Assembly: GCF_044704955.1 (NCBI RefSeq)
Contig: NC_091979.1
Location: forward strand, 317,068,001-317,132,000
DNA from: Pristiophorus japonicus
Taxonomy: Eukaryota
Length of the DNA: 64,000 nt
Reading direction: 5' to 3'
The position numbers and the translations under genes are program-made. This document shows positions 305 to 57,628 of this stretch, in pieces (position 1 is the first letter of the stretch; every line of letters starts with the position of its first letter). The notes beneath the pieces are model-generated. The model was not told the DNA's origin and did no database searches. It saw only the letters and a program-made list of their open reading frames with translations.

Positions 305-396
305 CATAGAAACATAGAAAATAGGTGCAGGAGTAGGCCATTCAGCCCTTCTAGCCTGCACCTCCATTCAATGAGTTCATGGCTGAACATGAAACT

Positions 397-11794: not shown

Positions 11795-13130
11795 GGGGCT
11801 GAATTTGGTCAAGGTCTCCGCTCGCCCAAGTGCCGCCCAAAGTGCCGCCGATGGCCGCCGAGGATCGGACGGTACTTTCGGCGGGGTTTTCATCGCCGAG
11901 GTCCCTCGATGTCGGAGGGTGACAAACCAATGACGTACGCCACCAATCTGGGCGGCAGCGGGCGGGAGTCTCATTCTCAGCGGCAGAGGCACTTGCCTCC
12001 CAAGTGCCGCCGAGGATGGAGTTGGGCCCACGGAGGGTCGAAGAGGTCAAAATAAAAATCGTCACCAACAAAAAAACCACATCTGAGGACCTCCAGGTAA
12101 GTCCCTGCAAATAAATAATTTATCAACATTCCACTTACCTTTGTTACAGGATCTTGACACTTACCGTTGAGGACAGAGCAGCCTCCACCCAGCGGTCCCC
12201 CGCCGTCCTGCCGCCGACTCCCGCCCACACCAATCGGGCATCTCGGCGGGCGGGAGTCGACTTACGTGCATCAGCCATCCGCTGACATTGACGGGCACTT
12301 CCCGGCGGCTCTCCCTTCCCACCCGCTCCAGGCCACATCGAAAGTGGCACTGGGCAGTTCGAGCAGAGGAATGTTGGCAGCAGTGGGCGGCAGTGGGAGG
12401 CAGTGGATGGCAGTGGATGGCAGTGGGCGGCAGTGGATGGCAGCGGGTGGCAGTGGGAGGCAGTGGGTGGCAGTGGGCAGCAATGGATGGCAGTGGGTGG
12501 CAGTGGGCAGCAGTGGATGGCAGTGGGTGGCAGTGGGAGGCAGTGGATGGCAGTGGGTGGCAGTGGGCGGCAGTGGGAGGCAGTGGATGGCAGTGGGTGG
12601 CAGTGGGAGGCAGTGGATGGCAGTGGGCAGCAGTGGATGGCAGTGGCTGGCAGTGGGCAGCAGTGGATGGCAGTGGGTTGCAGTGGGCAGCAGTGGATTG
12701 CAGTGGATGGCAGTGGATGGCAGTGGGTGGCAATGGATGGGAGTGGATGGCAGTGAGTGGCAGTGGGCGGCAGTGGATGGCAGTGGGTGGCAGTGGATGG
12801 GAGTGGATGGCAGTGGGTGGCAGTGGGCGGCAGTGGATGACAGCGGATGGCAGTGGGCGGCAGCAGATGGCAGTGGGCCGCAGTGGGCAGCAGTGGGTGG
12901 CAGTGGATGGCAATGGGTGGCAGTGGATGGCAGTGGGCGGCAGTGGATGGCAGTGGATGGGAGTGGGTGGCAGTGGGTGGCAGTGGGCAGCAGTGGGTGG
13001 CAGTGGATGGCAGTGAGCGGCAGTGGGCGGCAGTGAATGGCAATGGGTGGCAGTGAATGGCAGTGGGCGGCAGTGGGCGGCAGTGGATGGCAGTGGATGG
13101 CAGTGAGTGGCAGTCATTAAAATTGGCCCC
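11795..13130. mobile_element. GC-rich non-autonomous DNA-transposon-like element carrying a decamer array
   Basis: Imperfect termini GGGGCTGAATTT and AAATTGGCCCC resemble the Harbinger TIRs in this window. No TSD found. Confidence 0.4.
12381..13114. repeat. 10-bp tandem repeat (CAGTGGRYGG)n, about 73 copies
   Basis: Seen directly in the sequence. Confidence 0.97.
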
Positions 13131-13147
13131 CAGATCAATTAATTCTT

Positions 13148-17665: not shown

Positions 17666-18176
17666 GGGCTCAAGCCTAGAATGGTGCCCAAGCCTAGAGT
17701 GGGGCCCAAGCCTAGAGTGGGGCCCAAGTCTAGAGTGGGGCTCAAGCCTAGAGTGGGGCCCAAGCCTAGAGTGGGGCCCAAGCCTAGAGTGGGGCCCAAG
17801 CCTAGAGTGGGGCCCAAGCCTAGAGTGGGGACCAAGCCTAGAGTGGGGCCCAAGCCTAGAGTGGTGCCCAAGCCTAGAGTGGGGCCCAAGCCTAGAGTGG
17901 GGCCCAAGCCTAGAGTGGGGCTCAAGCCTAGAGTGGGGCCCAAGCCTAGAGTGGGGCCCAAGCCTAGAGTGGGGCCCAAGCCGAGAGTGGGGCCCAAGCC
18001 TAGAGTGGGGCCCAAGCCTAGAGTGGGGCCCAAGCCAAGAGTGGGGCCCAAGCCGAGAGTGGGGCCCAAGCCTAGAGTGGGGCCCAAGCCTAGAGTGGGG
18101 CCCAAGCCTAGAGTGGTGCCCAAGCCTAGAGTAGGGCCCAAGCCTAGAGTGGGGCCCAAGCCGAGAGTGGGGCCCA
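17666..18176. repeat. 18-bp tandem repeat (GGGGCCCAAGCCTAGAGT)n, about 28 copies
   Basis: Seen directly; lies in the hAT left subterminal region. Confidence 0.97.
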
Positions 18177-18313: not shown

Positions 18314-20828
18314 ATGCATTCTACACACAAATCCGGGTTAAAAAAAGGAACGAACACGAGCTACGCAAGGAGCAAAAGAGACGAGAAGTAGCTAAACTGC
18401 TTAAACTAGAACATTTTTTCCAGCTAATAACGCAAGATCATGAAGATGAAGACCAAGATGACGTTGTGCAGTTAAGTTCAACAATGAAACCACTCGTGGC
18501 ACCAGACTCAGAGTTGGGCGAGTTGGAGCTCCAAGTCTAAAAAGTTGAAGAAGATGACAACCAACTGGCACATACTGAGCTGAAAGAGATGCAATTTATG
18601 AGCGACATTGGGCTGTGGGGAGACAATATCTCAGAAGACATGTAAAGCCATTGGATTGCAAAAGGTAGTGAGGACTACCGAAACTGTGATAAAGACTTCC
18701 AAAACTCCGGTGTGATTCATGCCAAGGAAGGATGTCGCTGATACTGCTCGAAGTCCTTCTTCACACGTGTGCACCAACTGACAGCGGAACGTGTGGAGTG
18801 AATGTGGCTCTGTTAGTCACCATCAAACGGTAGTGTATACTGCTTTGTTTGCAAGGTCACAGCACAAATAAGAAGCTACTTTACTCATGGGTTTAATGAC
18901 TGGAAGCATGGAGATGAGACGATTTCATCTCACGAAAACAGCCACCAGCACAGAGAAGCCATGGTAGTAATGTGCACTAGACAAGCAGGCACTGGTTTTG
19001 TGGATGGTCATATTGTCTTCCAGTTTGAAAATGAATTGCAGTGCTGTCGCAAGGTGCTAGAGCGGGCTGTCTGTGTCATAACATTTTTCTGTGAACGAGG
19101 TCTTTCATTGCGAGGTGGAGACAAAATCGTTGGGTCTCCAAGAAATGGTAATTATCTGGGTGTGTTGGAGGATCTCGCAAACTACGATGCATTTCTTGCT
19201 GAACACATCAAGCAGTTTGCCAACAAAGGCAAGGGGCATACTTCATACTTGTCTTCCACCACTTGTGAAGAACTGATTAGTCTGATGGGTGGCAAAGTAC
19301 TTGAGACAATTATCCAGGAATTGAAATCAGTGAAGTTCTATTCAGTATCTGTTGATTCAACACCAGATGCCACACACTCAGATCAGCTGACATTTGTTGT
19401 CCGCTATGTTCTACCGACTGGTCCTGAGGAAAGATTCCTCATGTTGTTGCCGATAATCGGTCATACTGGACAAGAAATAATAGAAATAATAGAAATAACA
19501 CTGGCCTTTCTGGATGAGAATGGGATTGATGTACAAAATTGCCACAGACAATCTTATGATAATGCTTCAAATGCGAGTGGTAAATACATTGGTGTCCAAA
19601 TTATCATCAAAGAGCAATGCCCATATGCGACGTTTATACCATGCACAGCACACTCACTCAACCTTGTGGGGAAAAACAATGCCGAACGCAGCCCAGTGAT
19701 CATCAGATTTTTGACATTGTACAAAAGTTGTACACTTTTCTCTCTGCATCAACGTATCGCTGGTGACTGCTTTATGAAAAACTAAAGTTTTTAGGGCTGT
19801 CTGTCGTCAAACAGCTTTCTGCTACTCGATGGTCAGCAAGGTATGAAGCAGTGTCAGCCCTGCTCAAAGATTACACTCCCATATGTGAAGTGTTGGAATC
19901 TCTGGCAACTGAGGTGAAACAGAAAGTTGAATGCTGAAATGAAGCTCAGTTGATCCTTGACAAACTGGGCACCTGGATTCAGCGATTCTCATTGTTATTT
20001 GGAACACAGTCTTGAAGCGCTTTCACCTGACCAATCTCTCGCTTCAAGAGATCGGCTTGAATCTAAATGTCATGATGTCCTTACTCGGGTCCCTTGTCGA
20101 TTTTGTCAAGACACGGTGAACAGAGTTTGAGGACTTCGAAGCCCGAGGGATTAAACTGTGGCCAGAATGAGTACAATTCAGCTCCGAGGCACATTCAGGT
20201 ATGCAGTCGCCGTTATGACGATGGAGACGCTGAAAACATTGTGCTGTCACCCAAGGAGAAATTCAAAACTGAAGTGTTCCTTGTCATCATTGATCAACTA
20301 ATCAATACCTTGAAACATCACCTTGAAGCACACAAGGAAATCAACTGTAAGTTTGGATTCCTGTCCAAGCTAGCCGCTCTCTCGACTCATGAGATCAAGC
20401 AAGCCACAGCAAATATTGCCTGTTCCTATCCCAACAATCTGGAACCCAGGATTGAAAATTAATTCATCCAGTTTTCTAACTTGGTGGCATCCTCAACAGA
20501 GCTTCAACCCTCAAGTTGTGTCAAACAAACGAAGCCATCAGAGCTGAGAATGTACCAATTGCTCAATAGACACGCCCTCACCCAAACCTTTTCTAACACT
20601 GAAATAGCTCTTCGGATATACCTGTCGAGGATGGTATCAAATTGCAGTGGTGACCAATCCTTCTCGAAACTAAAACGCATCAAGGATGAGGTCTGGAACC
20701 GAATGGGACAAGATTGACTTAATAGTCTTTCAATCGTGAGAATTAAGAGCGAAGTACTGCGAGGACTTGACTTCTCAAAAATCATTGACGAGTTTAGCCG
20801 ACAAAAATCTAGGAAAAGACCAATGTAA
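18314..20828 (+). pseudogene. hAT transposase, multiple stops and frameshifts
   Basis: VYCFVC, GFNDWKH, LSLRGG, NGNYLG, SVSVDSTPD..HSDQL, QSYDNASN.SG, PCTAHSLNL, TRWSARY, and a dimerisation domain ALRIYLS..VSNCS...SFSKLKRIK. Confidence 0.9.
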
Positions 20829-24839: not shown

Positions 24840-27800
24840 GGACCGGAACCAACGTCCGAGGGGGAGTGTCTGCTAGTGCTGTTGGGGAGGAATTAAACTA
24901 ATATGGCAAGGGGATGGGAACCAATGCAGGGAGACAGAGAGAAACAAAAAGGAGACAAAAGCAAAGGACAGAAAGGAGATGAGTAAAAGTGGAGGGCAGA
25001 GAAACCCAAGGCAAAAAACAAAAAGGGCCACTGTACAGCAAAATTCTAAAGGGTCAAAGTGTAATAAAGAGGCAAGCATGAAAGCTCAGTGCCTCAATGC
25101 AAGGAGTATTCGGAACACAGGAGAGGGCTCTGAGCTAGTTAGAATGTGTGAGAGCTCAGATGAACAGGATCCCAAGAAAGAATGCAAAAGACAGGAGGCA
25201 ACAGAGCAGAGTAGCACTGGGGTAAGTGTAAACCACAAGGTGATAGGAAGGGACAATATGTATGAATACAAAGGGGCTGCAGGAGGGGTCAAAACTAAAA
25301 ATCATGGTTTAAGAACTGGTAGTAAAACACTCTACCTAAACGCACGCAGCATTCGAAATAAAGTAAATGAGTTGACGGCACAAATCATGACAAATGGGTA
25401 TGATTTGGTGGCCATTGCAGAAACGTGGTTGCAGGGTGGCCAAGAATGGGAATTAAACATACAGGGGTATCTGGCAATTCGGAAAGATAGACAAGAAGGG
25501 AAAGGAGGTGGGGTAGTTCTGTTAATAAAGGATGATATCAGGGCAGTTGTGAGAGACGATATTGGCTCCAATGAACAAAATGTTGATTCATTGTGGGTGG
25601 ACATTAGAGATAGTAAGGGGAAAAAGTCACTGGTGGGCGTAGTTTATAGGCCCCCAAATAATAACTTCATGGTGGGGCAGACAATAATCAAGGGAATAAT
25701 GGAGGCATGTGAAAAAGGAACGGCAGTAATCATGGGGGATTTTAACCTACATATCGATTGGTCAAATCAAATTGCACGGGGTAGCCTTGAGGAAGAATTC
25801 ATAGAATGCATACGGGATTGTTTCTTAGAACAGTATATTACAGAACCTACAAGGGAGCAAGCGATCTTAGATCTGGTCCTGTATAATAAACGATCTCCTC
25901 GTAAAAGATCCTCTCGGAATGACTGATCACAGTATGGTTGAATTTGTAATACAGATTGAGGGTGAGGAAGTAGTGTCTCAAACGAGCGTACTATGCTTAA
26001 ACAAAGGGGACTACAGTGGGATGAGGGCAGAGTTGGCTAAAGTAGACTGGAAACACAGACTAAACGGTGGCACAATTGAGGAACAGTGGAGGACTTTTAA
26101 GGAGCTCTTTCATAGTGCTCAACAAAAATATATTCCAGTGAAAAAGAAGGGTGGTAAGAGAAGGGATAACCAGCCATGGATAACCAAGGAAATAAAGGAG
26201 AGTATTAAATTAAAAACCAATGCGTATAAGGTGGCCAAGGTTAGTGGGAAATTAGAAGATTAGGAAAATTTTAAACGACAGCAAAGAATGACTAAGAAAG
26301 CAATAAAGAAAGGAAAGATAGATTACGAAAGTAAACTTGCGCAAAACATAAAAACAGATAGTAAAAGCTTTTACAGATATATAAAATGGAAAAGAGTGAC
26401 TAAAGTAAATGTTGGTCCCTTAGAAGATGAGAAGGGGGATTTAATAATGGGAAATGTGGAAATGGATGAGACCTTAAACAATTATTTTGTTTCGGTCTTC
26501 ACAGTGGAAGACACAAAAACCATGCCAAAAATTGCTGGTCACAGGAATGTGGGAAGGGAGGACCTTGAGACAATCACTATCACTAGAGGGGTAGTGCTGG
26601 ACAGGCTAATGGGACTCAAGGTAGACAAGTCCCCTGGTCCTGATGAAATGCATCCCAGGGTATTAAAAGAGATGGCGGAGGTTATAGCAGATGCATTCGT
26701 TATAATCGACCAAAATTCTCTGGACTCTGGTGAGGTACCAGTGGATTGGAAAGCAGCTAATGTAACGCCTCTGTTTAAAAAAGGGGGCAGATGAAAGGCA
26801 GGTAACTATAGGCCGGTTAGTTTAACATCTGTAGTGGGGAAAATGCTTGAAACTATCATTGAGGAAGAAATAGCAGGACATCTAGATAGGAATAGTGCAA
26901 TCAAGCAGACGCAACATGGATTCATGAAGGGGAAATCATGTTTAATTAATTTACTGGAATTCTTTGAGCATATATCGAGCATGGTGGATAGAGGTACACC
27001 GATGGATGTGGTATATTTAGATTTCCAAAAGGCATTCGATAAGGTGCCACATAAAAGGTTACTGCAGAAGATAAAGGTACGCGGAGTCAGAGGAAATGTA
27101 TTAGCATGGATCGAGAATTGACTGGCGAACAGAAAGCAGAGAGTCGGGATAAATGGGTCCTTTTCGGGTTGGAAATCGGTGGTTAGTGGTGTGCCACAGG
27201 GATTTGTGCTGGAAGCACAACTGTTTACAATATACATAGATGACCTGGAAGAGGGGATAGAGTGTAGTGTAACAAAATTTGCAGATGACACAAAGATTAG
27301 TGGGAAAGCGGGTTGTGTAGAGGACACAGAGAGGCTGCAAAGAGATTTAGATAGGCTAAGCGAATGGGCTAAGGTTTGGCAGATGGAATACAATGTCGGA
27401 AAATGTGAGGTCATCCACCTTGGAAAAAAAAACAGTAAAAGGGAATATTATTTGAATGGGGAAAAATTACAACATGCTGTGGTGCAGAGGGACCTGGGGG
27501 TCCTTGTGCATGAATCACAAAAAGTTAGTTAGCAGGTGCAGCAGGTAATCAGGAAGGCGAATGGAATGTTGGCCTTCATTGCGAGAGGGATGGATTACAA
27601 AAGCAGGGAGGTCCTGCTGCAACTGTACAGGGTATTGGTGAGGCCGCACCTGGAATACTGCGTGCAGTTTTGGTCGTTATAAGGAAGGATATACTAGCTT
27701 TGAACGGGGTACAGAGACGATTCACTAGGCTGATTCCAGAGATGAGGGGGTTACCTTATGATGATAGATTGAGTAGACTGGGTCTTTACTCATTGGAGTT

Positions 27801-28202
27801 CAGAAGGATGAGGGGTGATCTTTTAGAAACATTTAAAATAATGAAAGGATAGACAAGATCGAGGCAGAGAGGTTGGTTCCACTGGTCGGGGAGACTAGAA
27901 CTAGGGGGCACAGCCTCAAAATACGGGTGGCCAATTTAAAACCGAGTTGAGAAGGAATTTCTTCTCCCAGAGGGTTGTGAATCTGTGGAATTCTCTGCCC
28001 AAGGAAGCAGTTGAGGCTAGCTCATTGAATGTATTCAAATCACAGATAGATAGATTTTTAACCAATAAGGGAATTAAGGGTTACGGGGAGCGGGCGGGTA
28101 AGTGGAGCTGAGTCCACGGCCAGATCAGCCATGATCTTGTTGAATGGCGGAGCAGGCTCGAGGGGCTAGATGGCCTACTCCTGTTCCTAATTCTTATGTT
28201 AT
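24840..28202 (+). mobile_element. Chimeric 5'-truncated CR1 LINE (end of ORF1, EN, RT)
   Basis: EN and RT motifs, TTCTTATG tail, TSD GTCCCC(C)TC at 24831-24839 and 28203-28210. Confidence 0.93.
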
Positions 28203-33120: not shown

Positions 33121-34464
33121 CAAATTAGGCGTCCAGAACGAGGTGGGGGGGGAGGGGGAGGGAAGGGAAGTCATTAAATTCTATAATAAATCTTTATTTA
33201 TACTTATACAAATATTAAACAAATAAATCCAACCTGAATAAACATTTATAAGCAAAGAAAAGATTAAATAAACCATCTTCCTACCTGTGTGAAAGTGCTT
33301 CAGGCAGGCCTTTCGGGACCGAAGGCTGAACGGGCCGGCCCGAGACTTCAGGCAGGGCCCGTCCCCAGCACCAGATTTACAGGTAGGTGGCGTTGGGTCG
33401 GGGAGGTTCGGTTCGGTTCGGGTCGGGTCGGGGGGAGGGAGGGAGGGAGAGAGAGCGGGGGGGGGGAGGGAGGGAGAGAGAGGGGGGGGGTAGGGAGGGA
33501 GGGAGAGAGAGGGGGGCAGGGAGAGAGAGAGAGTGGGGAGGGGGGGAGAGAGAGGGGGGAGGGTGAGAGAGANNNNNNNNNNNNNNNNNNNNNNNNNNNN
33601 NNNNNNNNNNNNNNNNNNNNNNNNNNNNNNNNNNNNNNNNNNNNNNNNNNNNNNNNNNNNNNNNNNNNNNNNNNNNNNNNNNNNNNNNNNNNNNNNNNNN
33701 NNNNNNNNNNNNNNNNNNNNNNNNNNNNNNNNNNNNNNNNNNNNNNNNNNNNNNNNNNNNNNNNNNNNNNNNNNNNNNNNNNNNNGAGAGGTCAGGTCGG
33801 GGAGGGGGAGGTCAGGTCGGATCCAGTCTGGGGGCGGGGGGGGGAGCGGGAGTCGAGTCGTGTCAGATCGGGTCGGGTCGAGTCGGGGTGGGGGGGCGGG
33901 GAGCGGGAGCAGGAGCGCGGGTCGGGTCCAGTCGGCGGGGGGCGGAGCGGGAGCGGGAGCGGGAGTCCGGTCGGGTTGGGGGGGGGGGGGGGGTGGGAGT
34001 CGAGTCGGGGGGGGTCCAGTCGGAGGGTGGGGGGGGTCAGGTTGGGGGGCGGGAGTCGGGTCGGGTCGGGTCCAGTCGGGGGTGGGGGGGAACAGGAGCG
34101 CGGGTCGGATCGGGTCGGGTCCGGTCGGGGGGTGGGGGAAGCAGGAGCTGGCCGGGGGAGGAGCCTTATTCACGCAGACCCAGTGAGGCCATTCGGCCAG
34201 GGCTAGGGGATGCTTGCTTCGGGCGCCTGGAGCTACTGCACTTGCGTGCCCACTATAGCGCGCATGTGCAGAGGTCCCGGCACTGTTTTCAGCGCAGGGA
34301 CCTGGCTCCGCCCCCCCACAGCTCGTGCTGCGCTGCGCGAGGGCCAGAGGACCTGCAGGGAGGTGGAGAATACCGAGGATTTTTTTAGGCGCACTTTGTG
34401 GCGCGAAAAACGGGCGTCCAGGTCGGGACTGCGCCGTTCTAGGCGTGTGTGGAAACTTAGGCCC
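33121..34464. mobile_element. GC-rich non-autonomous element with low-complexity G-rich interior
   Basis: TIR-like right end GGAAACTTAGGCCC. The left end is missing. Confidence 0.5.
33573..33785. other. Assembly gap (213 N)
   Basis: N run inside G-rich low-complexity sequence. Confidence 1.
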
Positions 34465-44475: not shown

Positions 44476-45267
44476 CAGGTACAACGTCCAGAATCCAGAA
44501 TTCCCAAAACCAGAATTGTCCGAAAATTGGACAGTTTTGAAGCGGCCAAGGTGGCAACGGAGGGCAGTGCCGGGGGGCCACGGCCAGTGAGAATCGGCGG
44601 CCAGCGAGGAGCGGGGGATCGGCCGGTGGCGAGGAGTGAAGGATCGGCCGGCGGTGAGGAGCGGAGAATCGGCGGCCAGCGAGGAGCGGAGGATCGGCCG
44701 GTGGCGAGGAGTGAAGGATCGGCCGGTGGCGAGGAGTGAAGGATCGGCCGGCGGTGAGGAGCGGAGAATCGGCGGCCAGCGAGGAGCGGAGGATCGGCCG
44801 GTGGCGAGGAGTGAAGGATCGGCCGGCGGTGAGGAGCGGAGAATCGGCGGCCAGCGAGGAGCGGAGGATCGGCCGGTGGTGAGGAGAGAAGGATCGGCCG
44901 GCGGTGAGGAGCGGAGGATTGGCCGGCGGTGAGGAGCGGAGGATTGGCCGGTGGTGAGGAGCGGAGGATTGGCCGGTGGTGAGGAGCGGGGGATTGGCCG
45001 GTGGTGAGGAGCGGAGGATTGGCCGGCGGTGAGGAGTGGAGGATTGGCCGGCGGTGAGGAGCGGAGGATCGGCCGGCGGTGAGGAGCGGAGGATTGGCCG
45101 GCGGTGAGGAGCGGAGGATTGGCCGGTGGTGAGGAGCGGAGGATTGGCCGGTGGTGAGGAGCGGGGGATTGGCCGATGGCGAGGAGCGGAGGATTGGCCG
45201 ATGGTGAGGAGCGGAGGATTGGCCGATGGCGAGGAGCGCCAACAGCGGATTTCAGACATTGTACCTG
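44476..45267. mobile_element. Tc1/mariner (Tigger-like) non-autonomous element
   Basis: TIRs CAGGTACAACGTCCAGAATCC and (reverse complement) CAGGTACAATGTCTGAAATCC. TA on the right flank. Confidence 0.8.
44586..45237. repeat. 25-bp CpG-rich tandem repeat, about 26 copies, with a 75-bp higher-order unit on the left
   Basis: Unit GAGGAGCGGAGGATTGGCCGGCGGT. Confidence 0.95.
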
Positions 45268-47672: not shown

Positions 47673-48773
47673 AACATAAGAACATAAGAAATAGGAGCAG
47701 GAGTAGGCCACCTGGCCCCATGAACCTGCTCCGCCATTTAATATTAAGGCTGATCTGATAATGGACTCAGCTCCACATCCCTGACCGCTCCCCATAACTC
47801 CTTGTTCCCTTATCGCTCAAAAATCTGTATATCTCCTCCTTAAATATATTCAATGACCCAGCCTCCACAGTGCTCTGGGGCAGAGAATTCCATAGATTTA
47901 CAACCCTCTGAGAGAAGAAATTCCTCCTCAACTCAGTTTTAAATGGGTGGCCCCTTATTCTGAGACTATGTGCCCTAGTTTTAGTTTCCCCGATGAGTGG
48001 AAATATCCTTTCTGCATCCACCTTGTCAAGCCCCCTCATTATCTTATTTTTCGATAAGATACCTCTCATTCTTCTGAACTCCAATGAGTATTGGCCCAAC
48101 TTACTCAACCTACCTCCATAAGTCAACCCCCTCAACTGCGGAATCAACCAAGTGAACCTTCTCTGAACAGCCTCCAATGCAAGTATATCCTTTCTTAAAT
48201 ATGGAAGCCAAAATTGTACGCAGTACTCGATAGGTTGGCCTCACCAATATCCTGTACAGTTGTAGCAGGACTTTGCTGCTTTTATACTCTATCCCCCTTG
48301 CAATAAAGGCCAACATTCCATTTGCCTTCCTGATTACTTGCATACTAACTTTGTGTGTTTCATGCACAAGGACCCCCAGTTCCCTCTGTACAGCAGCACT
48401 TTGCAATTTTTTTTCATTTAAATTATAATTTGCTTTTCTATTTTTTCTGCCAAAGTGGATAACCTCACATTTTCCCACATTATACTATATCTGCCAAATG
48501 TTTGCCCACTCACTTAGCCTGTCTATATCCCTTTGCAGATTTTTTGTGTCCTCCTCACTATTTGCTTTCCCACCCATCTTTGTATCATCAGCAAACTTGG
48601 CTACATTACACTCGGTCCCTTCATCCAAGTCATTAATATAGATTGTAAATACTTGAGGCCGCAGCAACGATCCCTGCGGCACCCCACTCGTCACTGTTTG
48701 CCAACCAGAAAATGACCCATTTATCCCGACTCTCTGTTTTTGTTCGTCAGCCAATCCTCTATCCATGCCAACA
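47673..48773 (-). mobile_element. 5'-truncated CR1 in IFIT
   Basis: (ACATAAGA)n tail, GVPQGS and FADDT. Confidence 0.92.
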
Positions 48774-48774
48774 T

Positions 48775-51380
48775 GCTAGTTGGATCCAAAATTGGTTCAG
48801 CGGTAAGAAGCAAAGGGTAATGGTAAATGGATGTTTTTGTGACTGGAAGGATGTTTCCAGTGGGGTCCGCAGGGCTCAGTACTGGGTTTCTTGCTTTTTG
48901 TGGTATACATCAATGATCTAGATTTGATTATCGGGAGTATGATTAAGAAGTTTGCAGGTGACACCAAAATTGGCTGTGTGGTCGTTAATGAAGCAGAAAG
49001 TCATGGACTGCAGGAGGATATCAATCTAATGGTCAGGTGGGCAGAGCAGTGGCAAATGGAATTTAATTTGGATAAGTATGAGGTAATGCACTTTGAGAGG
49101 GCTAATAAGGAAAGGGTATACACATTAACCGGTAAAAGTGTAGATGAATAAAGGGATCTTGGAGTGCTTGTCCACAGATCCCTGAAAGTAGCAGGCCAGG
49201 TGGATAAGGTGGTGAAGAAGGCATACGGAATGGTTGCCTTTCTTGGCTGAGGCACATAATACAAGAGCAGGGAGGTTATGCTTAAAATGTATAATACTTT
49301 GGTTAGGCCACAGCTGGAGTACTGCGTGCAGTTCTGGTCGCCATATTATAGAAAGGACGTGATTGCAATAGAGAGGGTGCAGAGGACATTTGCTAGGATG
49401 CTGCCTGGAATGGAGAAACTTAGCTATGAGGATAGAAACATAGAAACATAGAAAATAGATGCAGGATCAGGCCATTCAGCCCTTCTCGCCTGCACCATCA
49501 TTCAATCAGTTCATGGCTGAACATGAAACTTCAGTACCCCCTTCCTGCTTTCTCGCCATACCCCTTGATCCCCCGAGTAGTAAGGACTTCATCTAACTCC
49601 CTTTTGAATATATTTAGTGAATTGGCCTCAACTACTTTCTGTGGTAGAGAATTCCACAGGTTCACCACTCTCTGGGTGAAGAAGTTTCTCCTCATCTCGG
49701 TCCTAAATGGCTTACCCCTTATCCTTAGACTGTGACTTCCCCAACATTGGGAACATTCTTCCTGCATCTAACCTGTCTAAACCCGTCAGAATTTTAAACG
49801 TTTCTATGAGGTCCCCTCTCATTCTTCTGAACTCCAGTGAATACAAGCCCAGTTGATCCAGTCTTTCTTGATAGGTCAGTCCCACCATCCCGGGAATCAG
49901 TCTGGTGAATCTTCGCTGCACTCTCTCAATAGCAAGAATGTCCTTCCTCAAGTTAGGAGACCAAAACTGTACACAATACTCCAGGTGTGGCCTCACCAAG
50001 GCCCTGTACAACTGTAGCAACACCTCCCAGCCCCTGTACTCAAATCCCCTCGCTATGAAGGCCAACATGCCATTTGCTTTCTTAACCGCCTGCTGTACCT
50101 GCATGCCAACCTTCAATGACTGATGTACCATGACACCCAGGTCTCGTTGCACCTTCCCTTTTACTAATCTGTCACCATTCAGATAATAGTCTGTCTCTCT
50201 GTCTTTACCACCAAAGTGGATAACCTCACATTTATCCACATTATACTTCATCTGCCATTCATTTGCCCACTCACCTAACCTATCCAAGTCACTCTGCAGC
50301 CTCATAGCATCCTCCTCGCAGCTCACACTGCCACCCAACTTAGTGTCATCCGCAAATTTGGAGATACTACATTTAATCCCCTCATCTAAATCATTAATGT
50401 ACAATGTAAACAGCTGGGGCCCCAGCACAGAACCTTGTGGTACCCCACTAGTCACTGCCTGCCATTCTGAAAAGTACCCATTTACTCCTACTCTTTGCTT
50501 CCTGTCTGACAACCAGTTCTCAATCCACGTCAGCACACTACCCCCAATCCCATGTGCTTTAACTTTGCACATTAATCTCTTGTGTGGGACCTTGTCGAAA
50601 GCCTTCTGAAAGTCCAAATATACCACATCATTGGATAGGCTGTGTTTGTTCTCATTGGAACAGAGGATGTTGAGAGGAGACCTCATTGAGGTGTCCAAAA
50701 TTTTGAGGGGTCTGGATATAGTGGATAGCAAGGACCTATTTCCCTTGGTGGTGGGTTCAATTATGAGGGGGCATAGTTTTAAGGTGGTTGGTGGAAGGTT
50801 CAGAGGGGATTTGAGGGGTGGCTTTTTCAAGCAGAGGGTTGTGGGGGTCTGGAACTTAGGGCCTGGAAGGGTGGTGGATGTAGAAACCCTCAACACATTT
50901 AAAAGGTGCTTGGATGGACACTTGAAGTGCCATAATCTGCAGGGTTACATGGACCTAAAGCTGGTAAGTGGGATTAGACTGGATAACCTGTTGTTGGCAG
51001 GCACAGCTATGATGGTAAGTACTGCAGCAAATCGAATATATCCAGGGTGATCTGGACGAGTTTCGATTACCTGGATGGGTTGGAGAGGAATGTTCCGAGA
51101 TATTTTTTCCCCAATTGACCTGGGTTTTTATCTGTTTTTTGCCTTTCCCAGGAGATCACATGGCTCCGGTTGGGGAGGAGTGTAGAATGTTTCGGTGCAA
51201 GGGGTGTCGCAGTTGTGTGGGGCAGACTGGTTGGGCTGGGTGCTCTTTACCTTTCTGCCATTGTTCATTGTTCATACGTTTATATGTAACTTTCAGGGCT
51301 GCTGACTGAGGGCCGTATGTTTCTTTGTCGGCCGGTGTGGACACGATGGGCCGAAATGGCCTCCTTCTGCGTTGTAGATT
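48775..51380 (+). mobile_element. 5'-truncated CR1 of a different subfamily in IFIT, itself interrupted by the CR1 at 49432-50629
   Basis: WIQNW..KKQRVMVNG, FAGDTK, and LSYE..LDRL contiguous across the insertion. 3' end GGGCCGAAATGGCCTCC. Confidence 0.9.
49432..50629 (-). mobile_element. 5'-truncated young CR1
   Basis: (ATAGAAAC)n tail. RT is near-identical to the copy at 13148-15634. Confidence 0.95.
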
Positions 51381-52688
51381 TGCAATTGTGCAAAAATAAA
51401 TGATGGCTTCTGCTCAAATGCCTTTTCAAAATAGTACTTGCATTGATTGATCAACTCAGCTTTCTGTTGAAAAGCAGGATTGCGAGGGGCTTTGCTGCCT
51501 GGATATTTGATCAGTTGAAATATTTTTTTTCTGCAACACTGACCTATTTGGTGGTGTATGAAGGTAGAGTTTGGAGTAATTTTTAATGCTTTCTTCAACA
51601 GCTCCACAGCTTTTTCCACATCTCCTTCTCTTCTGTAAAATTTTGCTGCATAACGAGTTACATATGGAAGATCAGGGGACTTCTGCAATGCTTGTTCAAC
51701 TAATTCGTGTTCTTCCACCTTTTGATTGAACTCTTGTAGTTTTAGAGCCAACATGGCTACAGAGTCATCTGGATCAAGTTCCAGCACACGTCACAACTGC
51801 TTCACTGATTGGCTGCAGTCACCACTCTCTGGGGTACCAGAAAACCCTTCCAGACAGAACAAAACAGTCGCATAGCCAACGTTCCATTCAGTGTCATCAG
51901 GATCTTCCTCCAGAGTCTTCTCAAAACATTCCTTTGCCTCTTCATAGTATTGACAAGGAGAATTCAACAGTGACCAACCCTTCTCCCCGTATACTTCAGG
52001 TATCAGTGCTGTATACTGAGAGCCATCAGTAAATTATTTACAGATCATCTCCAGCTTGTCGAGGTAGGACTGGGCCTCTGTCAGTTGGCCCATGTGATAA
52101 TATACCCAGGCATAGTTTCCATAGGTGATGATGCTTCTTCTTTCAAATTCATGTTCATGGTTCTCCCTCAGAATCTTTTCAGCTTCCTTTAAGTTTTGAA
52201 TTGCCCCTTTGAATTGCCTTGCTGACAGTTTACAAATGCGAGGTGGTTGTCAGACCTGGCCTGATATTTCACACGAGCCTGTATTAAATCTTGTAATCTA
52301 TACTTCATGTCGTCCAAGTCAATGCTGTCTCTCTGTGGGCCCCACGTGAAGTGACATTGAAGCTGGCCAAGTTTTGCTTTCAAGCAATCATTCAGTGTGT
52401 TGCTGTAAGAGAACAAAATAATCAAAGCCCATCTTATGTGTATCTAACTTACATTTTTAGCTCATATATAATCAACATAGCAATGCTGGTAAAGTCAGAA
52501 TAGCAGAACAGATGAGCAGGTCAGTGCACATGGGCCCGGAACACCTCCCTGCAGCCTCACTGCCTGGCATCCCTCAGTTCGGGGGAAACCCATTGGAATC
52601 CCGTAATGGTCCCGGAGGCAACAACAAATGAACAATTGGCTCATGAGTGCCAGCAGAAATCCACGATCATCCATTAGTATGATCATAG

Positions 52689-53048
52689 GTAGGAACATAG
52701 GAACATGTTCCACCATTTAATTTATCATGGCTGAACTGTATCACAACTCCATCTACCCACCCTGGTTCTCTAACCCTTAATACCCTTGTCTAACAAAATT
52801 CTATCATCTCAGTTTTGACATTTTTAATTGGCCTAACCTCGACAGCTTATTGGGGGAGAGAGTTCCAGATTTCCACTACCCTTTGTGTGAAGAGGTGCTG
52901 TCTGACATCACCCCTGAATGGCTGAGCTCAAATTTCTATTTCATGCCCCCTTGTTCTGGCCTCCCCCACCAGAGGAAATCGTTTCTCTCGATCGACCCGG
53001 TCAAATCCTTTAATCATATCAAACATCTCAATTAGATCATCCCTTAAC
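52689..53048 (-). mobile_element. Old CR1 3' fragment
   Basis: (AGGAACAT)n tail and FTQRVVEIWNSLP-type sequence. Confidence 0.75.
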
Positions 53049-53593
53049 ACTGGGGAAAGAGGGCTCGGGGAATGGGAGACTGGGGAATGGGGGCTCGGGG
53101 AGAGGGAGACTGGGGAATGGGGGCTCGGGGAGAGGGAGACTGGGGAATGGGGGCTCGGGGAGAGGGAGACTGGGGAATGGGGGCTTGGGGAGAGTGAGAA
53201 TGGGGAATGGAGGCTTGGGGAGAGGGAGACTGGGGAATGGGAGCTCGGGGAGAGGGAGACTGGGGAATGGGGGCTCGGGGAGAGGGAGACTGGGAAATGG
53301 GGGCTTGGGGAGAGGGAAACTGGGGAATGGGGGCTCGGGGAGAGGGAGACTGGGGAATGAAGGCTTGGGGAGAGGGAAACTGGGGAATGGGGGCTCAGGG
53401 AGAGGGAGACTGGGGAATGGGAGCTCGGGGAGAGGGAGACTGGGGAATGGGGGCTCAGGGAGAAAGAGATTGGGGAATGGGGGCTCGGGGAGAGGAAGAC
53501 TGGGGAATGGGGCCTCGGGGAGATGGAGACTGGGGAATGGGGGCTCGGGGAGAGGGGGAATGGGGGCTCGGGAGAGAGAGACTGGGGAATGGG
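53049..53593. repeat. G-rich 30-bp minisatellite, left array, about 18 copies
   Basis: Unit GGGGGCTCGGGGAGAGGGAGACTGGGGAAT. Confidence 0.97.
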
Positions 53594-53751
53594 TCAGGGG
53601 GGATCATGGTGAGGCCAGGCGGGAGGTAGAAGAGGCCAGGTTGAGTGTAATTTATTCTGTGGGGGCCTGGAAGAGCTGGACTGATCCCTGGGCTCCAGAC
53701 AAGGTCACTGGGCCTCTCCAGCCCTGGCCTTCTCTCACACACCACAGCAAC

Positions 53752-53932
53752 TCCCTTCAGCCCCCTCCCAGCAGATCCTTTCAGTCCCTTCCCTGCAGAT
53801 CCCTTCAGCCCCCTCCCAGCCGATCCCTTCAGCCCCCTCCCAGCAGATCCCTTCAGCCCCCTCCGAACAGATCCATTCAGCCCCCTCCCAGCAGATCCCT
53901 TCAGCCCCCTCGCAGCAGATCCCTTGAACCCC
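53752..53932. repeat. C-rich 24-bp tandem repeat, about 7.5 copies
   Basis: Unit CCCTTCAGCCCCCTCCCAGCAGAT. Confidence 0.93.
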
Positions 53933-54052
53933 TCAGGAGATCGAGCTGCCGGGGGTGGGCAGAGCTTTCGGGGGGTTGGGAGTCGGGAAGTTGGGTTTGG
54001 ATGGTGGTGGGAGAACTCGGGACCGGGAGAGGCGGGGATTATCTTTAACCTA

Positions 54053-54096
54053 CCCGGCAACTGATGATGCAGCTCGCAGTATTTGTCTGATTGGAT
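54053..54096 (+). promoter_or_regulatory. MHC-type X1/X2-Y promoter module (RFX / CREB-ATF / NF-Y)
   Basis: CCCGGCAACTGATG (X1) overlaps TGATGATGC (X2-like), then a 20-bp spacer, then CTGATTGGAT (Y). This matches the motifs and 19-20 bp X-Y spacing of vertebrate MHC promoters. No S box at the canonical distance. Confidence 0.7.
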
Positions 54097-54279
54097 AGTT
54101 CAATGTTTGGAAAGTTTATTTCGGCACCAACACAAACTCTCCCCGTGTCTTTTCTTCCCGGAGCCTATTGACTCACAGCCTGTTTTTATTGTAATTGGAG
54201 ACAAATATACCCTCGAACCAATCGAACCGGAGGAGTCTGAGTGTAAAACACTCTGCACTGGGCAAAGCGCAAGAACAGA

Positions 54280-55358
54280 CAGCACAGGGCACAGAGACAG
54301 TCCCAGAGACACAGTATCAGCACAGGGCACCGAGACAGTCCCAGAGACACAGTATCAGCACAGGGCACAGAGAGACAGTCCCAGAGACACAGTATCAGCA
54401 CAGGGCACAGAGACAGTCCCAGAGACACAGTATCAGCACAGGGCACCGAGACAGTCCCAGAGACACAGTATCAGCACAGGGCACAGAGAGACAGTCCCAG
54501 AGACACAGTATCAGCACAGGGCACAGAGACAGTCCCAGAGACACAGTATCAGCACAGGGCACCAAGACAGTCCCGGAGACACAGTATCAGCATAGGGCAC
54601 AGAGAGACAGTCCCAGAGACACAGTATCAGCACAGGGCACAGAGAGACAGTCCCAGAGACACAGTATCAGCACAGGGCACAGAGAGACAGTCCCAGAGAC
54701 ACAGTATCAGCACAGGGCACAGAGAGACAGTCCCAGAGACACAGTATCAGCACAGGGCACAGAGAGACAGTCCCAGGGACACAGTATCAGCACTGGGCAC
54801 AGAGAGACAGTCCCAGAGACACAGTATCAGCACAGGGCACCGAGAGACAGTCTCAGAGACACAGTATCAGCACAGGGCACAGAGACAGTCCCAGAGACAC
54901 AGTATCAGCACAGGGCACAGAGACAGTCCCAGAGACACAGTATCAGCACTGGGCACAGAGAGACAGTCCCAGAGACACAGTATCGGCACAGGGCACAGAG
55001 AGACAGTCCCAGGGACACAGTATCAGCACTGGGCACAGAGAGACAGTCCCAGGGACACAGTATCAGCACAGGGCACAGAGAGACAGTCCCAGAGACACAG
55101 TATCAGCACAGGGCACAGAGAGACAGTCCCAGGGACACAGTATCAGCACTGGGCACAGAGAGACAGTCCCAGAGACACAGTATCAGCACTGGGCACAGAG
55201 AGACAGTCCCAGAGACACAGTATCAGCACTGGGCACAGAGAGACAGTCCCAGAGACACAGTATCAGCACTGGGCACAGAGAGACAGTCCCAGAGACACAG
55301 TATCAGCACAGGGCACAGAGAGACAGTCCCAGAGACACAGTATCGGCACAGGGCACAG
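54280..55358. repeat. 38/40-bp minisatellite, about 27 copies
   Basis: Unit AGCACAGGGCACAGAG(AG)ACAGTCCCAGAGACACAGTATC. Confidence 0.97.
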
Positions 55359-55454
55359 GAATCACACGGTCTGAATTGGGCGCAGCTCACGGACGGTCTC
55401 TCGGAAAAGGATTGCCTGCAAACCGCTCATTCCAGCCTGTCGAGGGAAGTAACA

Positions 55455-56522
55455 ATGTTTGGACTGACCGTGCTGGCCCTTCTGTGTGGAGAGGTGTGTG
55501 CAGGCTCTCACTCCCTACGGTACATGCACACGGCTATCACTCCGCTCCCGGGCATTGCTGAGTTCACCGATGTGGGTTATGTGGATGACCAGCAGTTTAT
55601 TTACTATGACAGTGTGAGCCGCCAGTACACCCCGCGGCAGCGGTGGATCAGGGAGAGCGAGGGCGCCGAGTACTGGGAGCGCTACACACAGATCCTGCGG
55701 GGCAAGGAGCAGGTGATGAAAGGCAACATTCAGACCGTCTTAACCCGCACCAACCAGACCGGCGGGATCCACACGCTGCAGAGGTTGTGCGGCTGTGAGC
55801 TGCGGGATGACGGCACCACCAGCGGCTTCTGGCAGTACGGCTGGGACGGGAAGGACCTGATCAGCTTCGACAAGGATCGCCTGGTGTGGGTCACCCCGGT
55901 ACCGTGGGGAGAGATCACCAAGAACAAGTGGGACCAGGACAGGGCCGAAATGCAGCAGGACAAAAGTTACCTGGAGCAGGAGTGCATCGAGTGGCTGAAG
56001 AAATACCTGAAGGCTGGAGAGAGAGAACTGGGAGCTGTTGCTCCTCAAGTGTTTCCTTCTGTGGACAAGGCGTCGAATATTAAAGCCCCCCAACTCTCCT
56101 GTCTCCTCACAGGTTTTTACCCTCGCGAAATCCAAGTGACCCTCCTGAGAAATGGCGAGCCAATCAGGGACACGGAATCCACGGGCATCCTGCCCAACCA
56201 CGATGGCACCTACCAGCTCACGACATGGGCTCAGATCGAGCCCGCGGATGGAGCCACCTATTCCTGTCAGTATGAGCAGAGCGGCCAAGCAGGAGGGAAG
56301 ACCCGAGACTGGGACGGGACGTTCCGAGTGACTCCAGGATCGCCAGAGGGAACAAATAGGGGTTTGATTGTTGGAATTGTGATTGCTGCCGTCGCCCTGA
56401 TTGCTCTTGTGATCGGTGCGGTTGTGTGGAAGAGGAGAGGAGGAGAGGAGACATCTGGTTACAGCCCAGCGAACCCTGCTGAACGAGGAGAATTATCCCC
56501 AAACTCACCAGCCCAAGCCTGA
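55455..56522 (+). CDS. MHC class I heavy chain, shark classical UAA-like, intronless, 355 aa
   Basis: ACAATG start and 16-aa leader. Alpha1 GSHSLRY..VGYVDD..EYW..NQT, alpha2 HTLQ..GC..WDGKD..TKNKW..YLEQECIEWLKKYL, Ig-C1 alpha3 C..TGFYP..PNHDGTYQ..YSC, then TM and a cytoplasmic GYSPA tail. Uninterrupted ORF. Confidence 0.95.
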   Translation: MFGLTVLALLCGEVCAGSHSLRYMHTAITPLPGIAEFTDVGYVDDQQFIYYDSVSRQYTPRQRWIRESEGAEYWERYTQILRGKEQVMKGNIQTVLTRTNQTGGIHTLQRLCGCELRDDGTTSGFWQYGWDGKDLISFDKDRLVWVTPVPWGEITKNKWDQDRAEMQQDKSYLEQECIEWLKKYLKAGERELGAVAPQVFPSVDKASNIKAPQLSCLLTGFYPREIQVTLLRNGEPIRDTESTGILPNHDGTYQLTTWAQIEPADGATYSCQYEQSGQAGGKTRDWDGTFRVTPGSPEGTNRGLIVGIVIAAVALIALVIGAVVWKRRGGEETSGYSPANPAERGELSPNSPAQA

Positions 56523-56773
56523 GGCTGGTCCCGAAGTGAAGTTCACTGGGACTAGAATCTGGACTTGCTGTGTCGCAAGGAGGGTTCATTCAGAAGCAAT
56601 CCACGATTCTGCATCTTCATTTCGTTTGATTGTCACTGGCTGCTGCCAGTGTTAATAGTAATCGGTAACGTATCTATCATTGAGTGGGTTTGGGGATATT
56701 TTCTTTTTGGTGATTGGATAGAAATCTCCAGTTGGGTCTTTTGGTGTTTAATGTAAATGAGATATGTCTAATT

Positions 56774-56834
56774 CGGCACGGGCTGGATGGCCAAATGGTC
56801 GTCTTCCGTGCTGCAACCATTCTATGATTCTATG
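56774..56834 (+). mobile_element. CR1 3'-terminal fragment with (ATTCTATG)2 tail ending the class I 3' region
   Basis: GGCACGGGCTGGATGGCCAAATGGTCGTCTTCCGTGCTGCAACCATTCTATGATTCTATG resembles the other CR1 3' ends in the window. Confidence 0.8.
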
Positions 56835-56847
56835 TATGGTGGCCGGA

Positions 56848-57628
56848 GGAGAGGGAGACTGGGAATGGGGGCTGGGGGAGAGAGGGAGACTGGGAATGGG
56901 GGCTTGGGGAGAGAGAGACTGGGGAATGGGGGCTCAGGGAGAGGGAGACTGGGGAATGGGGGCTCGTGGAGAGGGAGACTGGGGAATGGGGGGTGGGGGA
57001 GAGGGAGACTGGGGAATGGGGGCTCGGGGAGAGAGGGAGAGACTGGGGAATGGGGGCTTGGGAAGAGGGAGACTGGGAATGGGGGCTCCGGGCGAGGGAG
57101 ACTGGGGAATGGGGGCTTGGGGAGAGTGGGAGACTGAGGAATGGGAGCTTGGGGAGAGGGAGACTGGGGAATGGGGGTTCAGGGAGACGGTGACTGGGGA
57201 ATGGGGGCTCAGGGAGCGGGAGACTGGCGAATGGGGGCTTGGGGACTGGGAGACTTGGGAATGGGGGCTCGGGGAGAGAGAGACTGGGGAATGAGGGCTT
57301 GGGGAGAGGGAGACTTGGGAATGGGGCCTCGGGGAGAGAGAGACTGGGGAATGGGGGCTCGGGGAGCGGGAGACTGGGGAATGAGGGCTTGGGGAGAGGG
57401 AGACTTGGGAATGGGGCCTCGTGGAGAGAGAGACTGGGGAATGGGGGCTCGGGGAGAGAGGGAGACTGGGGAATGGGGGCTCTGGGAGAGGGAGACTGGG
57501 GAATGGGGGATTGGGGACTGGGAGACTTGGGAATGGGGGCTCGGGGAGATAGAGACTGGGGAATGGGGGCTCGGGGAGAGAGAGACTGGGGAATGGGGGC
57601 TCGGGGAGAGGGAGACTGGGGAATGGGG
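56848..57628. repeat. G-rich 30-bp minisatellite, right array, about 26 copies
   Basis: Same unit and orientation as 53049-53593, but more heterogeneous. Confidence 0.97.

What the first reader, a model, noticed from the sequence alone, without database searches (positions are those of the whole stretch)
55455..56522. Intact, completely intronless classical-type MHC class I gene
Seen: leader, alpha1, alpha2, alpha3, TM and cytoplasmic tail form one 1068-nt ORF with no intron at any domain junction and no disablement, while every neighbouring coding remnant is broken. Known: class I genes normally have about one exon per domain, and classical molecules keep peptide-terminus anchors. Equivalents of Y7, Y59, R84 (non-mammalian form), T143, K146, W147, Y159, W167, Y171, the N86 glycan (NQT), both disulfides and the cytoplasmic Tyr are all present. 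Inference: a processed copy of a classical UAA transcript that could still present peptides. I cannot tell whether single-exon shark class I genes of this lineage are already described.
Basis: partly seen in the sequence, partly recalled or inferred. Interest (0 to 1): 0.9.

Follow-up and report, generated by a model that had tools for sequence, protein, structure and literature searches.

The report
Intronless shark MHC class I retrogene
A Japanese sawshark carries an intact antigen-presenting (MHC class I) gene whose whole protein is coded without introns; it ends in a jumping-gene tail, sits beside a dead interferon-response gene and not among MHC genes, and is one of several near-identical copies, so it looks like a retrogene kept under selection, though its function is unproven.

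Summary
Window 55455-56522 (+) is one uninterrupted 355-codon MHC class I heavy chain: leader, alpha1, alpha2, alpha3, transmembrane segment and tail.

- **Species:** Pristiophorus japonicus. The protein is already in public protein sets, with five other variants at least 99% identical.
- **Already seen by the scan:** notes report other copies on other DNA of this genome, 0.45-2.2 Mb away on the same piece.
- **Retrocopy evidence:** all coding introns are missing. There is no poly(A). The 3' UTR ends at 56834 in a CR1-type LINE tail, a hairpin plus (ATTCTATG)x2, built like four LINE ends in this window.
- **Context:** satellites and LINEs surround the gene. A broken IFIT gene lies head-to-head 3 kb upstream. 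No MHC-linked gene is in the window.
- **5' intron:** only the coding part is intronless. A paralogue's model starts in an exon encoded identically here (52606-52676), with splice sites for a 2.76 kb 5' intron.
- **Constraint:** the protein keeps the peptide-end anchor residues and 76 of 79 near-invariant elasmobranch class I columns. Its alpha1-alpha2 is the longest branch in the tree.
- **Transcription:** exact-match contigs in small, probably RNA, runs suggest weak transcription.

Function, interferon control and age remain inferred.

The parts
55455..56522 (+). Intronless class I coding sequence, 355 codons plus stop. Leader 55455-55502, alpha1 55503-55766, alpha2 55767-56042, alpha3 56043-56318, connecting peptide/TM/tail 56319-56519.
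   Evidence: ORF and translation; Pfam MHC_I and C1-set; 6LUP alignment; genomic contigs continuous over all junctions.
55359..55454 (+). Unique 5' flank or 5' UTR, 96 nt between the 40-bp satellite and the ATG. Holds an inverted CCAAT (ATTGG, 55375-55379) and a splice acceptor (ttccAG, AG at 55434-55435).
   Evidence: Sequence; motif scan; exact contig 55385-55576 in run X6 crosses the acceptor unspliced; the N-terminal extension of paralogue models P0001 and P0122 is encoded here.
52606..52676 (+). Candidate upstream exon. It encodes 100% of the first 23 residues of paralogue model P0125, followed by a GT donor at 52677-52678.
   Evidence: tblastn of the P0125 N-terminus against the window; sequence. 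RNA support at this locus was not tested.
52677..55435 (+). Candidate 5' intron of 2759 nt. It contains the 30-bp, 24-bp and 40-bp tandem arrays.
   Evidence: Inferred from the P0125 model, with donor and acceptor present in the window; tandem arrays.
56523..56772 (+). Unique 3' UTR with no AATAAA or ATTAAA. Highly expressed relatives in run X5 match 56626-56789 at 90% or more.
   Evidence: loose end at 56626; depth bins 56596-56811.
56773..56834 (+). CR1-type LINE 3' tail: hairpin 56774-56813 and (ATTCTATG)x2 at 56819-56834. This is the end of the copy.
   Evidence: Pattern found once in the window, 0.02 expected; fold -26.1 kcal/mol, z -2.7; 56789-56834 is very high copy in the genome, with unlike flanks behind 56834; same build as four LINE ends in the window; CR1 hairpin plus 8-bp microsatellite described in PMC8665684.
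54280..55358 (.). 40-bp satellite, 27 copies, abutting the 5' flank.
   Evidence: TRF.
53049..53593 (.). 30-bp G-rich satellite. The same unit and orientation as the array downstream of the gene.
   Evidence: TRF consensus units are rotations of each other.
56836..57628 (.). 30-bp G-rich satellite starting 2 nt after the CR1 tail.
   Evidence: TRF; sequence.
51293..52425 (-). IFIT pseudogene, head-to-head with the class I gene. It has an in-frame stop at 51788-51790, a change of frame between 51967 and 52189, and a truncated C-terminal part.
   Evidence: TPR families in Pfam; IFIT5 E 2e-30 and IFIT1 E 7e-29 in the PDB; ORF pieces and frames.

Best explanation
This is one copy of a sawshark-lineage family of MHC class I retrogenes. 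Shown: the coding sequence lacks every intron, ends in a CR1-type LINE tail without poly(A), and lies among satellites, LINEs and a dead IFIT gene. At least six near-identical protein variants exist. A block reaching at least 2.8 kb upstream is shared with another copy. Inferred: a spliced class I RNA of the squalomorph main class I lineage was reverse-transcribed by CR1 machinery. Either that RNA carried a CR1 tail in its 3' UTR, or the enzyme switched template from a CR1 tail. The copy landed outside the MHC in or near an IFIT cluster, gained an upstream exon and promoter, and was then multiplied with its surroundings by segmental duplication. The protein most likely still folds as a beta2-microglobulin-associated, membrane-bound class I molecule that holds peptide ends in the classical way. 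It would work as a low-expressed, little-varying (nonclassical-type) presenter. Interferon control through its IFIT neighbourhood is a guess.
For: Intact 355-codon ORF with MHC_I and C1-set domains. All peptide-end anchors, the NQT site and the disulfides are kept. The gene differs from the majority in only 3 of 79 columns that are at least 90% conserved in 72 elasmobranch class I proteins, against 81 of 180 variable columns (Fisher 1.5e-12). That is the same range as classical molecules, 2-5 of about 80. Six variants at least 99% identical, all open. Genomic contigs are continuous over all domain junctions, while a related gene's contig ends at the alpha2/alpha3 junction. The CR1 tail comprises hairpin, octamers, a high-copy segment ending exactly at 56834, and four in-window LINE ends of the same build next to RT ORFs. 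CR1-type LINEs need such a 3' end (PMC8665684; PMC3747384). An IFIT pseudogene lies 3 kb upstream and no MHC gene is in the window. The upstream exon of P0125 is identical here. Exact contigs occur in small runs X5, X6 and X7. The satellite-to-gene depth ratio is about 60:1 in DNA but about 1:1 in X5, which argues against DNA carry-over.
Against: No parent gene or allele was identified, so retroposition rests on anatomy. No target-site duplication and no clear 5' end of the copy were found. The CR1 tail could be a separate 62-bp truncated insertion that happens to lie at the end of the unique sequence. Runs X5-X7 are of unrecorded kind, and RNA is inferred from depth patterns only. Exact contigs have depth 35-50, against 25,000-82,000 for the classical relative. 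There is no canonical poly(A) signal in the 3' UTR. No ISRE or NF-kB motif lies near the gene. The upstream exon brings an in-frame ATG that would bury the signal peptide. Constraint measured covers the whole branch, including time before retroposition. Copies are too alike for dN/dS.
Confidence: 0.7

Rival explanations
1. A young, functionally dead retrocopy family. A divergent classical allele was retrocopied recently, the block was amplified together with satellite and IFIT DNA, and the frames are open only because too little time has passed.
For: Copies are at least 99% identical. Exact contigs have very low depth beside the classical gene. The gene is embedded in satellites with no poly(A) signal and no recognisable class I promoter motifs except one ATTGG. 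Classical class I alleles can be very divergent, so an unseen parent allele is possible. Scan notes report dead intron-free class I copies elsewhere in this genome (unchecked).
Against: No protein above 74% identity outside the family exists among the annotated sawshark proteins found. Alpha1-alpha2 is the longest end branch in the tree, yet the near-invariant columns are spared. At least six separate copies are all open. Contigs of probable RNA runs from three samples and two studies match exactly.
Confidence: 0.2
2. Intron loss at the DNA level in a conventional gene, for example conversion by a cDNA as proposed for part of the teleost L lineage, followed by duplication. No retroposition to a new site.
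For: A 5' intron and an upstream exon are still modelled. An inverted CCAAT lies 75 nt before the ATG. An earlier scan note claims an MHC-type promoter at another copy (not confirmed here).
Against: The copy ends in a LINE tail. The neighbours are IFIT and repeats, not MHC genes. The upstream exon lies inside the IFIT remnant's region and has no class I counterpart.
Confidence: 0.07
3. Assembly artefact or cDNA contamination.
For: The gene is flanked by long tandem arrays, which are hard to assemble.
Against: Contigs of genomic runs cover the gene and both unique flanks without mismatch, at several times the depth of a related single gene. There is no poly(A). Several loci and several protein variants are annotated.
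Confidence: 0.03

Closest known systems
Main (classical-type) class I genes of squalomorph sharks: sawshark P0005, Squalus acanthias Q8HWH7, Heptranchias perlo; also nurse shark UAA (PDB 6LUP)
   Same: Same domain order and length (355 aa, as P0005). Same alpha3-TM-tail type (clade 100/99). Same peptide-end anchors, NQT site and disulfides.
   Different: No coding introns. Only 74%, 73% and 68% identity. Alpha1-alpha2 is an unresolved long branch. Multi-copy and near-invariant. Not next to MHC genes. Far lower contig depth in probable RNA runs.
Teleost L-lineage class I genes (processed genes; Dijkstra 2007, cited in PMC4364491)
   Same: Class I genes that lost the introns between alpha1, alpha2 and alpha3, lie away from classical loci and are multi-copy. 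Some are interferon- or virus-induced (PMC11695323, abstract).
   Different: L molecules lack the peptide-end anchors (PMC4364491), whereas this one keeps them. This is an independent origin inside an elasmobranch lineage. Here the leader and TM/tail introns are gone too.
Retrocopies and SINEs mobilised through a CR1-type LINE 3' tail ('stringent' recognition)
   Same: A hairpin plus 8-bp microsatellite at the very 3' end and no poly(A) (PMC8665684, PMC3747384).
   Different: The cargo is a full protein-coding mRNA that stayed intact. Such retrogenes are held to be rare where CR1 is the active LINE (Suh 2015, as cited in PMC8665684).
Elasmobranch nonclassical class I lineages (UBA, UDA, UEA, UFA)
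   Same: Low variation, multi-copy, probably restricted expression.
   Different: Those lineages are reported to map only inside the MHC in white shark, catshark and sawfish (PMC10751288), and they have ordinary exon structure as far as described. This family groups elsewhere in the tree: the clade with Heterodontus O19480 is separate.

Membership tests
MHC class I heavy chain | Alpha1-alpha2 peptide-binding superdomain (PF00129) | tested here: met
   Residues 17-192, E 8e-53, covering the full profile 1-179.
MHC class I heavy chain | C1-set Ig alpha3 domain, two conserved disulfides, TM anchor and tail | tested here: met
   PF07654 at 199-275. C114, C177, C216 and C271 are invariant. Hydrophobic stretch LIVGIVIAAVALIALVIGAVVW followed by KRR.
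Classical (class Ia, UAA-type) molecule | Conserved residues that bind peptide N- and C-termini | tested here: met
   Identical to 6LUP at all anchor equivalents.
Classical (class Ia, UAA-type) molecule | High polymorphism | tested here: inconclusive
   Six variants differ by 1-4 residues, none clustered in the groove. These are paralogues, not alleles, and there are no population data.
Classical (class Ia, UAA-type) molecule | High, broad expression | tested here: inconclusive
   Exact contigs have depth 7-50, against 25,000-82,000 for the 90-95% relative in the same runs. The kind of run is not on record, and contig depth is a poor measure.
Classical (class Ia, UAA-type) molecule | Tight linkage to TAP and immunoproteasome genes in the MHC | tested here: not met
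   In 64 kb there are only LINEs, transposase fragments, satellites and an IFIT pseudogene. The chromosome-scale position is not testable here.
Classical (class Ia, UAA-type) molecule | Phylogenetic grouping with classical genes of related species | tested here: inconclusive
   Alpha3-TM-tail groups with P0005, Squalus and Heptranchias (100/99). Alpha1-alpha2 is unresolved, with end branch 0.59.
Processed retrogene | All parental coding introns absent | tested here: met
   One ORF. Genomic contigs cross all junctions, and a relative's contig stops at 56042.
Processed retrogene | 3' end made by a retrotransposon enzyme: poly(A) for L1-type, LINE tail for CR1-type | tested here: met
   No poly(A). 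CR1-type hairpin and octamers at 56774-56834.
Processed retrogene | Target-site duplication and a defined 5' end | tested here: inconclusive
   None seen. The 5' flank runs into a 40-bp satellite at 55358. CR1 insertions often lack duplications (own knowledge).
Processed retrogene | Identified multi-exon parent | not testable with these tools
The nearest other sawshark protein is 74% identical.
Teleost L lineage | Groove without peptide-end anchors; teleost-specific clade | tested here: not met
   The anchors are present. The nearest relatives are all elasmobranch class I.

The most novel reading that the evidence does not exclude
A CR1-mobilised class I retrogene escaped the MHC, settled in an interferon-response (IFIT) gene cluster, took a new upstream exon and promoter there, and was kept and multiplied as a peptide-presenting, interferon-responsive, non-polymorphic class I molecule. 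That would be the first class I family outside the MHC in an elasmobranch, a group reported to keep all class I genes inside it. It would also be an origin independent of the intronless teleost L lineage.
Probability: 0.3. Interest if true: 0.8.

Novelty: new variant of a known kind. Interest (0 to 1): 0.6.

Why it matters
Elasmobranchs were reported in 2023 to be the one vertebrate group with every class I gene inside the MHC (PMC10751288). That report surveyed three species, none of them a squalomorph. An intact, multi-copy class I family beside IFIT genes in a sawshark would be an exception, and it would show how such an escape can happen, by retroposition.

It is also a rare example of a full, still open protein-coding retrogene that ends in a CR1-type tail. 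That route is thought to make few retrogenes.

It parallels the intronless teleost L lineage but keeps the classical peptide anchors. So it offers a natural test of whether a class I gene can work away from TAP and the immunoproteasome genes.

The limits are real. The gene is already annotated, the scan has reported sister copies, and function is unproven.

Tried and rejected
- I could not fetch the DNA of the paralogues or of P0005. That ruled out dN/dS, comparison of unit boundaries and a parent search.
- **Other class I remnants:** none are in the window (tblastn and blastn).
- **3' UTR and 5' flank:** neither has another copy in the window.
- **Motifs:** there is no AATAAA or ATTAAA in the 3' UTR. 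There is no ISRE, NF-kB or TATA motif within the 96-nt 5' flank. The only ISRE-like motif near the upstream exon (52933) lies in a LINE fragment, so I dropped it.
- **MHC-type promoter:** I could not confirm it here beyond one ATTGG, because a satellite starts 96 nt before the ATG.
- **Copy number from depth:** about 190-220 for the gene against about 24 for a related single gene suggests some 8-9 copies. The tool states that depth is no copy number, so this is only a rough hint.
- **Contig ends as boundaries:** I first read contig ends as boundaries of homology between copies. I rejected that because these contigs drop variants.
- **Spliced model:** the P0125-type model was compared exon by exon. 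The joined sequence was not built.
- **Not run:** I ran no structure prediction or complex prediction. No sawshark beta2-microglobulin was in hand, and a class I fold is not in doubt.
- the N run at 33573-33785 was left alone.

Full report
**Observation**

The window holds one open frame from ATG 55455 to TGA 56520-56522, 355 codons.

- Pfam finds the class I alpha1-alpha2 domain at residues 17-192 (E 8e-53, full profile) and a C1-set domain at 199-275.
- The best solved structure is nurse shark class I, 6LUP (E 5e-94).
- The four disulfide cysteines are invariant in alignment A1.
- A hydrophobic anchor followed by KRR, and a tail with a tyrosine, complete the protein.

It is far beyond chance.

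**Organism and copies**

The protein search shows the organism is Pristiophorus japonicus, the Japanese sawshark.

- The window's own protein is in the public collection, in a 90% cluster with five other variants of 355, 380 or 385 residues. All are named 'class I histocompatibility antigen, F10 alpha chain-like'.
- These variants differ from the window's protein by one to four residues.
- Notes of this scan report intact 1068-base intron-free copies on the same piece of the genome. They lie 0.45 Mb before and 0.46, 0.82, 1.35, 1.99 and 2.2 Mb after this window. The notes also report dead copies elsewhere.
- So the scan has found this family before, on other DNA. I treated those notes as leads and tested their claims in this window.

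**Is the intron-free state real?**

- Contigs of a genomic run (X1) match without mismatch and run through every domain junction (records 1-6).
- One contig of about single-gene depth carries the residue of the classical relative at 56031. It stops at 56042, which is the alpha2/alpha3 junction where ordinary class I genes have an intron.
- That run may be the sample the assembly was made from, so it is not fully independent.
- There is no poly(A) stretch. cDNA contamination is therefore unlikely.

**The 3' end**

- The unique 3' UTR ends at 56834 in a 40-nt hairpin (56774-56813, -26.1 kcal/mol, z -2.7).
- The hairpin is followed by ATTCTATG twice (56819-56834). That pattern occurs once in the window, against 0.02 expected.
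- Literature describes exactly this, a hairpin plus the 8-bp repeat ATTCTRTG, as the 3' structure that CR1 reverse transcriptase is thought to recognise (PMC8665684). PMC3747384 describes the same 'stringent' tail recognition for such LINEs.
- In the genomic run, 56789-56834 has a depth of 44,000-102,000. The letters behind 56834 disagree between contigs. That is what a dispersed retroelement end looks like.
- Four LINE ends in this window have the same build, a hairpin and then (TTTCTATG)n. They lie at 15590-15630 (+), 49477-49437 (-), 6972-6932 (-) and 343-303 (-). At least three follow reverse-transcriptase ORFs.
- In the small run X5, very deep contigs of the classical relative match the 3' UTR from 56626. 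One contig leaves the window's sequence at 56789 into a diverged CR1-like tail.
- That hints, without proving it, that the parent's 3' UTR already carried such a tail.

**Surroundings**

- The 30-bp G-rich satellite lies on both sides (53049-53593 and 56836-57628). A 24-bp array and a 40-bp satellite (54280-55358) lie upstream.
- The rest of the window is CR1-type LINE pieces (RT, endonuclease, GDSL esterase), other transposon fragments and more satellites.
- One ORF had TPR hits. It matches IFIT5 (E 2e-30) and IFIT1 in the PDB.
- Together with two further pieces, that ORF forms an IFIT gene on the minus strand at 51293-52425. It has an in-frame stop at 51788-51790, a change of frame and a missing end.
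- The earlier notes' claim of an IFIT setting therefore holds here, as a pseudogene head-to-head with the class I gene.
- No TAP, proteasome or other MHC gene is in the 64 kb.

**A 5' intron**

- Paralogue model P0125 has a different N-terminus. Its first 23 residues are encoded at 100% identity in this window at 52606-52674.
- They are followed by TA and a GT donor.
- The model then continues at the base after the AG at 55434-55435, 19 nt before the ATG.
- The exons were compared apart. I did not build the joined sequence.
- Three things follow:
  - Only the coding part is intronless. A 2,759-nt intron holding the satellites is plausible.
  - Another copy shares sequence at least 2.8 kb upstream, so the copies spread by DNA duplication of a block and not by repeated retroposition.
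  - A recruited upstream exon is what working retrogenes often acquire (own knowledge).
- Against function, this exon brings an in-frame ATG that would put 30 residues in front of the signal peptide.
- Run X6 has an exact contig at 55385-55576 that crosses the acceptor unspliced. So an unspliced or downstream-initiated form exists too, if X6 is RNA.

**Transcription**

- No holder is on record as RNA.
- Runs X5, X6 and X8 belong to one study and X7 to another. They hold 34-165 million letters.
- X5 covers the gene with depths from 25 to 82,000, while the genomic run is flat at about 200. I infer from this that X5 is RNA.
- Exact or one-mismatch contigs cover 55694-56831 (X5), 55385-55576 and 56541-56718 (X6), and 55762-56064 and 56353-56501 (X7, labelled as another organism).
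- The 40-bp satellite is about 60 times deeper than the gene in DNA but about equal in X5. DNA carry-over therefore does not explain the signal.
- The level is tiny beside the 90-95% relative. Loose ends in that relative read FNQGVKG and KEPNL, as in P0005.

**Relationships**

- In a tree of 80 proteins the family sits with P0005 (sawshark, 355 aa, 74% identical) and Squalus Q8HWH7 (73%) in an unresolved three-way fork. That fork lies inside a starred clade with Heptranchias and some galeomorph genes.
- Split by domain, alpha3-TM-tail joins that clade at 100/99. Alpha1-alpha2 is unresolved and has the longest end branch, 0.59 against a median of 0.27.
- Identity to P0005 is 65% in alpha1, 73% in alpha2 and 84% in alpha3.
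- Either the lineage is old or its groove domains evolved fast. A divergent unseen classical allele as parent cannot be excluded.

**Constraint**

- Of 79 ectodomain columns at least 90% conserved in 72 other elasmobranch class I proteins, the gene departs from the majority in 3.
- Of 180 variable columns, it departs in 81 (Fisher 1.5e-12).
- Classical molecules score 2-5 of about 80 on the same measure.
- The changes are thus of the kind that selection on a working class I molecule allows.
- This covers the whole branch, including any time before retroposition. The copies are too similar to each other for a rate test.

**Literature**

- I found no paper on intronless shark class I genes.
- Veríssimo et al. 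2023 state that no class I gene lies outside the MHC in the elasmobranchs they surveyed: white shark, catshark and sawfish. The words intron, retro and IFIT do not occur in that paper.
- The nearest known kind is the teleost L lineage. It lost the introns between alpha1, alpha2 and alpha3, but it lacks the peptide anchors.

**Verdict**

- This is a real, intact class I retrogene copy that was already annotated but is undescribed in papers. It was made through a CR1-type tail and multiplied with an IFIT-bearing block.
- I put 0.7 on the reading that the family is or recently was under selection as a class I molecule. I put 0.2 on young dead copies.

Noticed in passing
window 51293-52425 (-): IFIT pseudogene in three pieces: an in-frame stop at 51788-51790, a frame change between 51967 and 52189, and no C-terminal third. 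It lies head-to-head with the class I gene.
   Followed up: yes
window 303-3850 (-), 13143-15630 (+), 24877-27850 (+), 47770-50944 (-): CR1-type LINE copies with endonuclease, reverse transcriptase and, in one, a GDSL-esterase ORF. Those at 303-3850, 13143-15630 and 47770-50944 end in a hairpin plus (TTTCTATG)n. All have broken frames.
   Followed up: partly
window 10097-11450: Satellite with a 61/123-bp unit, 22 copies, 90-93% alike.
   Followed up: no
window 12380-13114, 17666-18176, 44606-45238: Further tandem arrays with 10-bp, 18-bp and 25-bp units. They give long spurious ORFs on both strands.
   Followed up: no
window 18817-19782 (+): ORF with DUF4371, a transposase-related domain. Elsewhere one ORF each hits the DDE_Tnp_4 (Harbinger-type) and gag aspartyl protease families; their positions were not located.
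   Followed up: no
window 33573-33785: Run of 213 N (gap or masked).
   Followed up: no
window 56166-56225: One genomic contig of about single-gene depth replaces 58 bases of alpha3 with 24 other letters. It probably comes from another class I gene of the same alpha3 type.
   Followed up: no
window 52800-53050 (-): LINE 3' fragment that contains the only ISRE-like motif near the upstream exon (52933-52942). It is probably not a regulatory element of IFIT or class I.
   Followed up: partly
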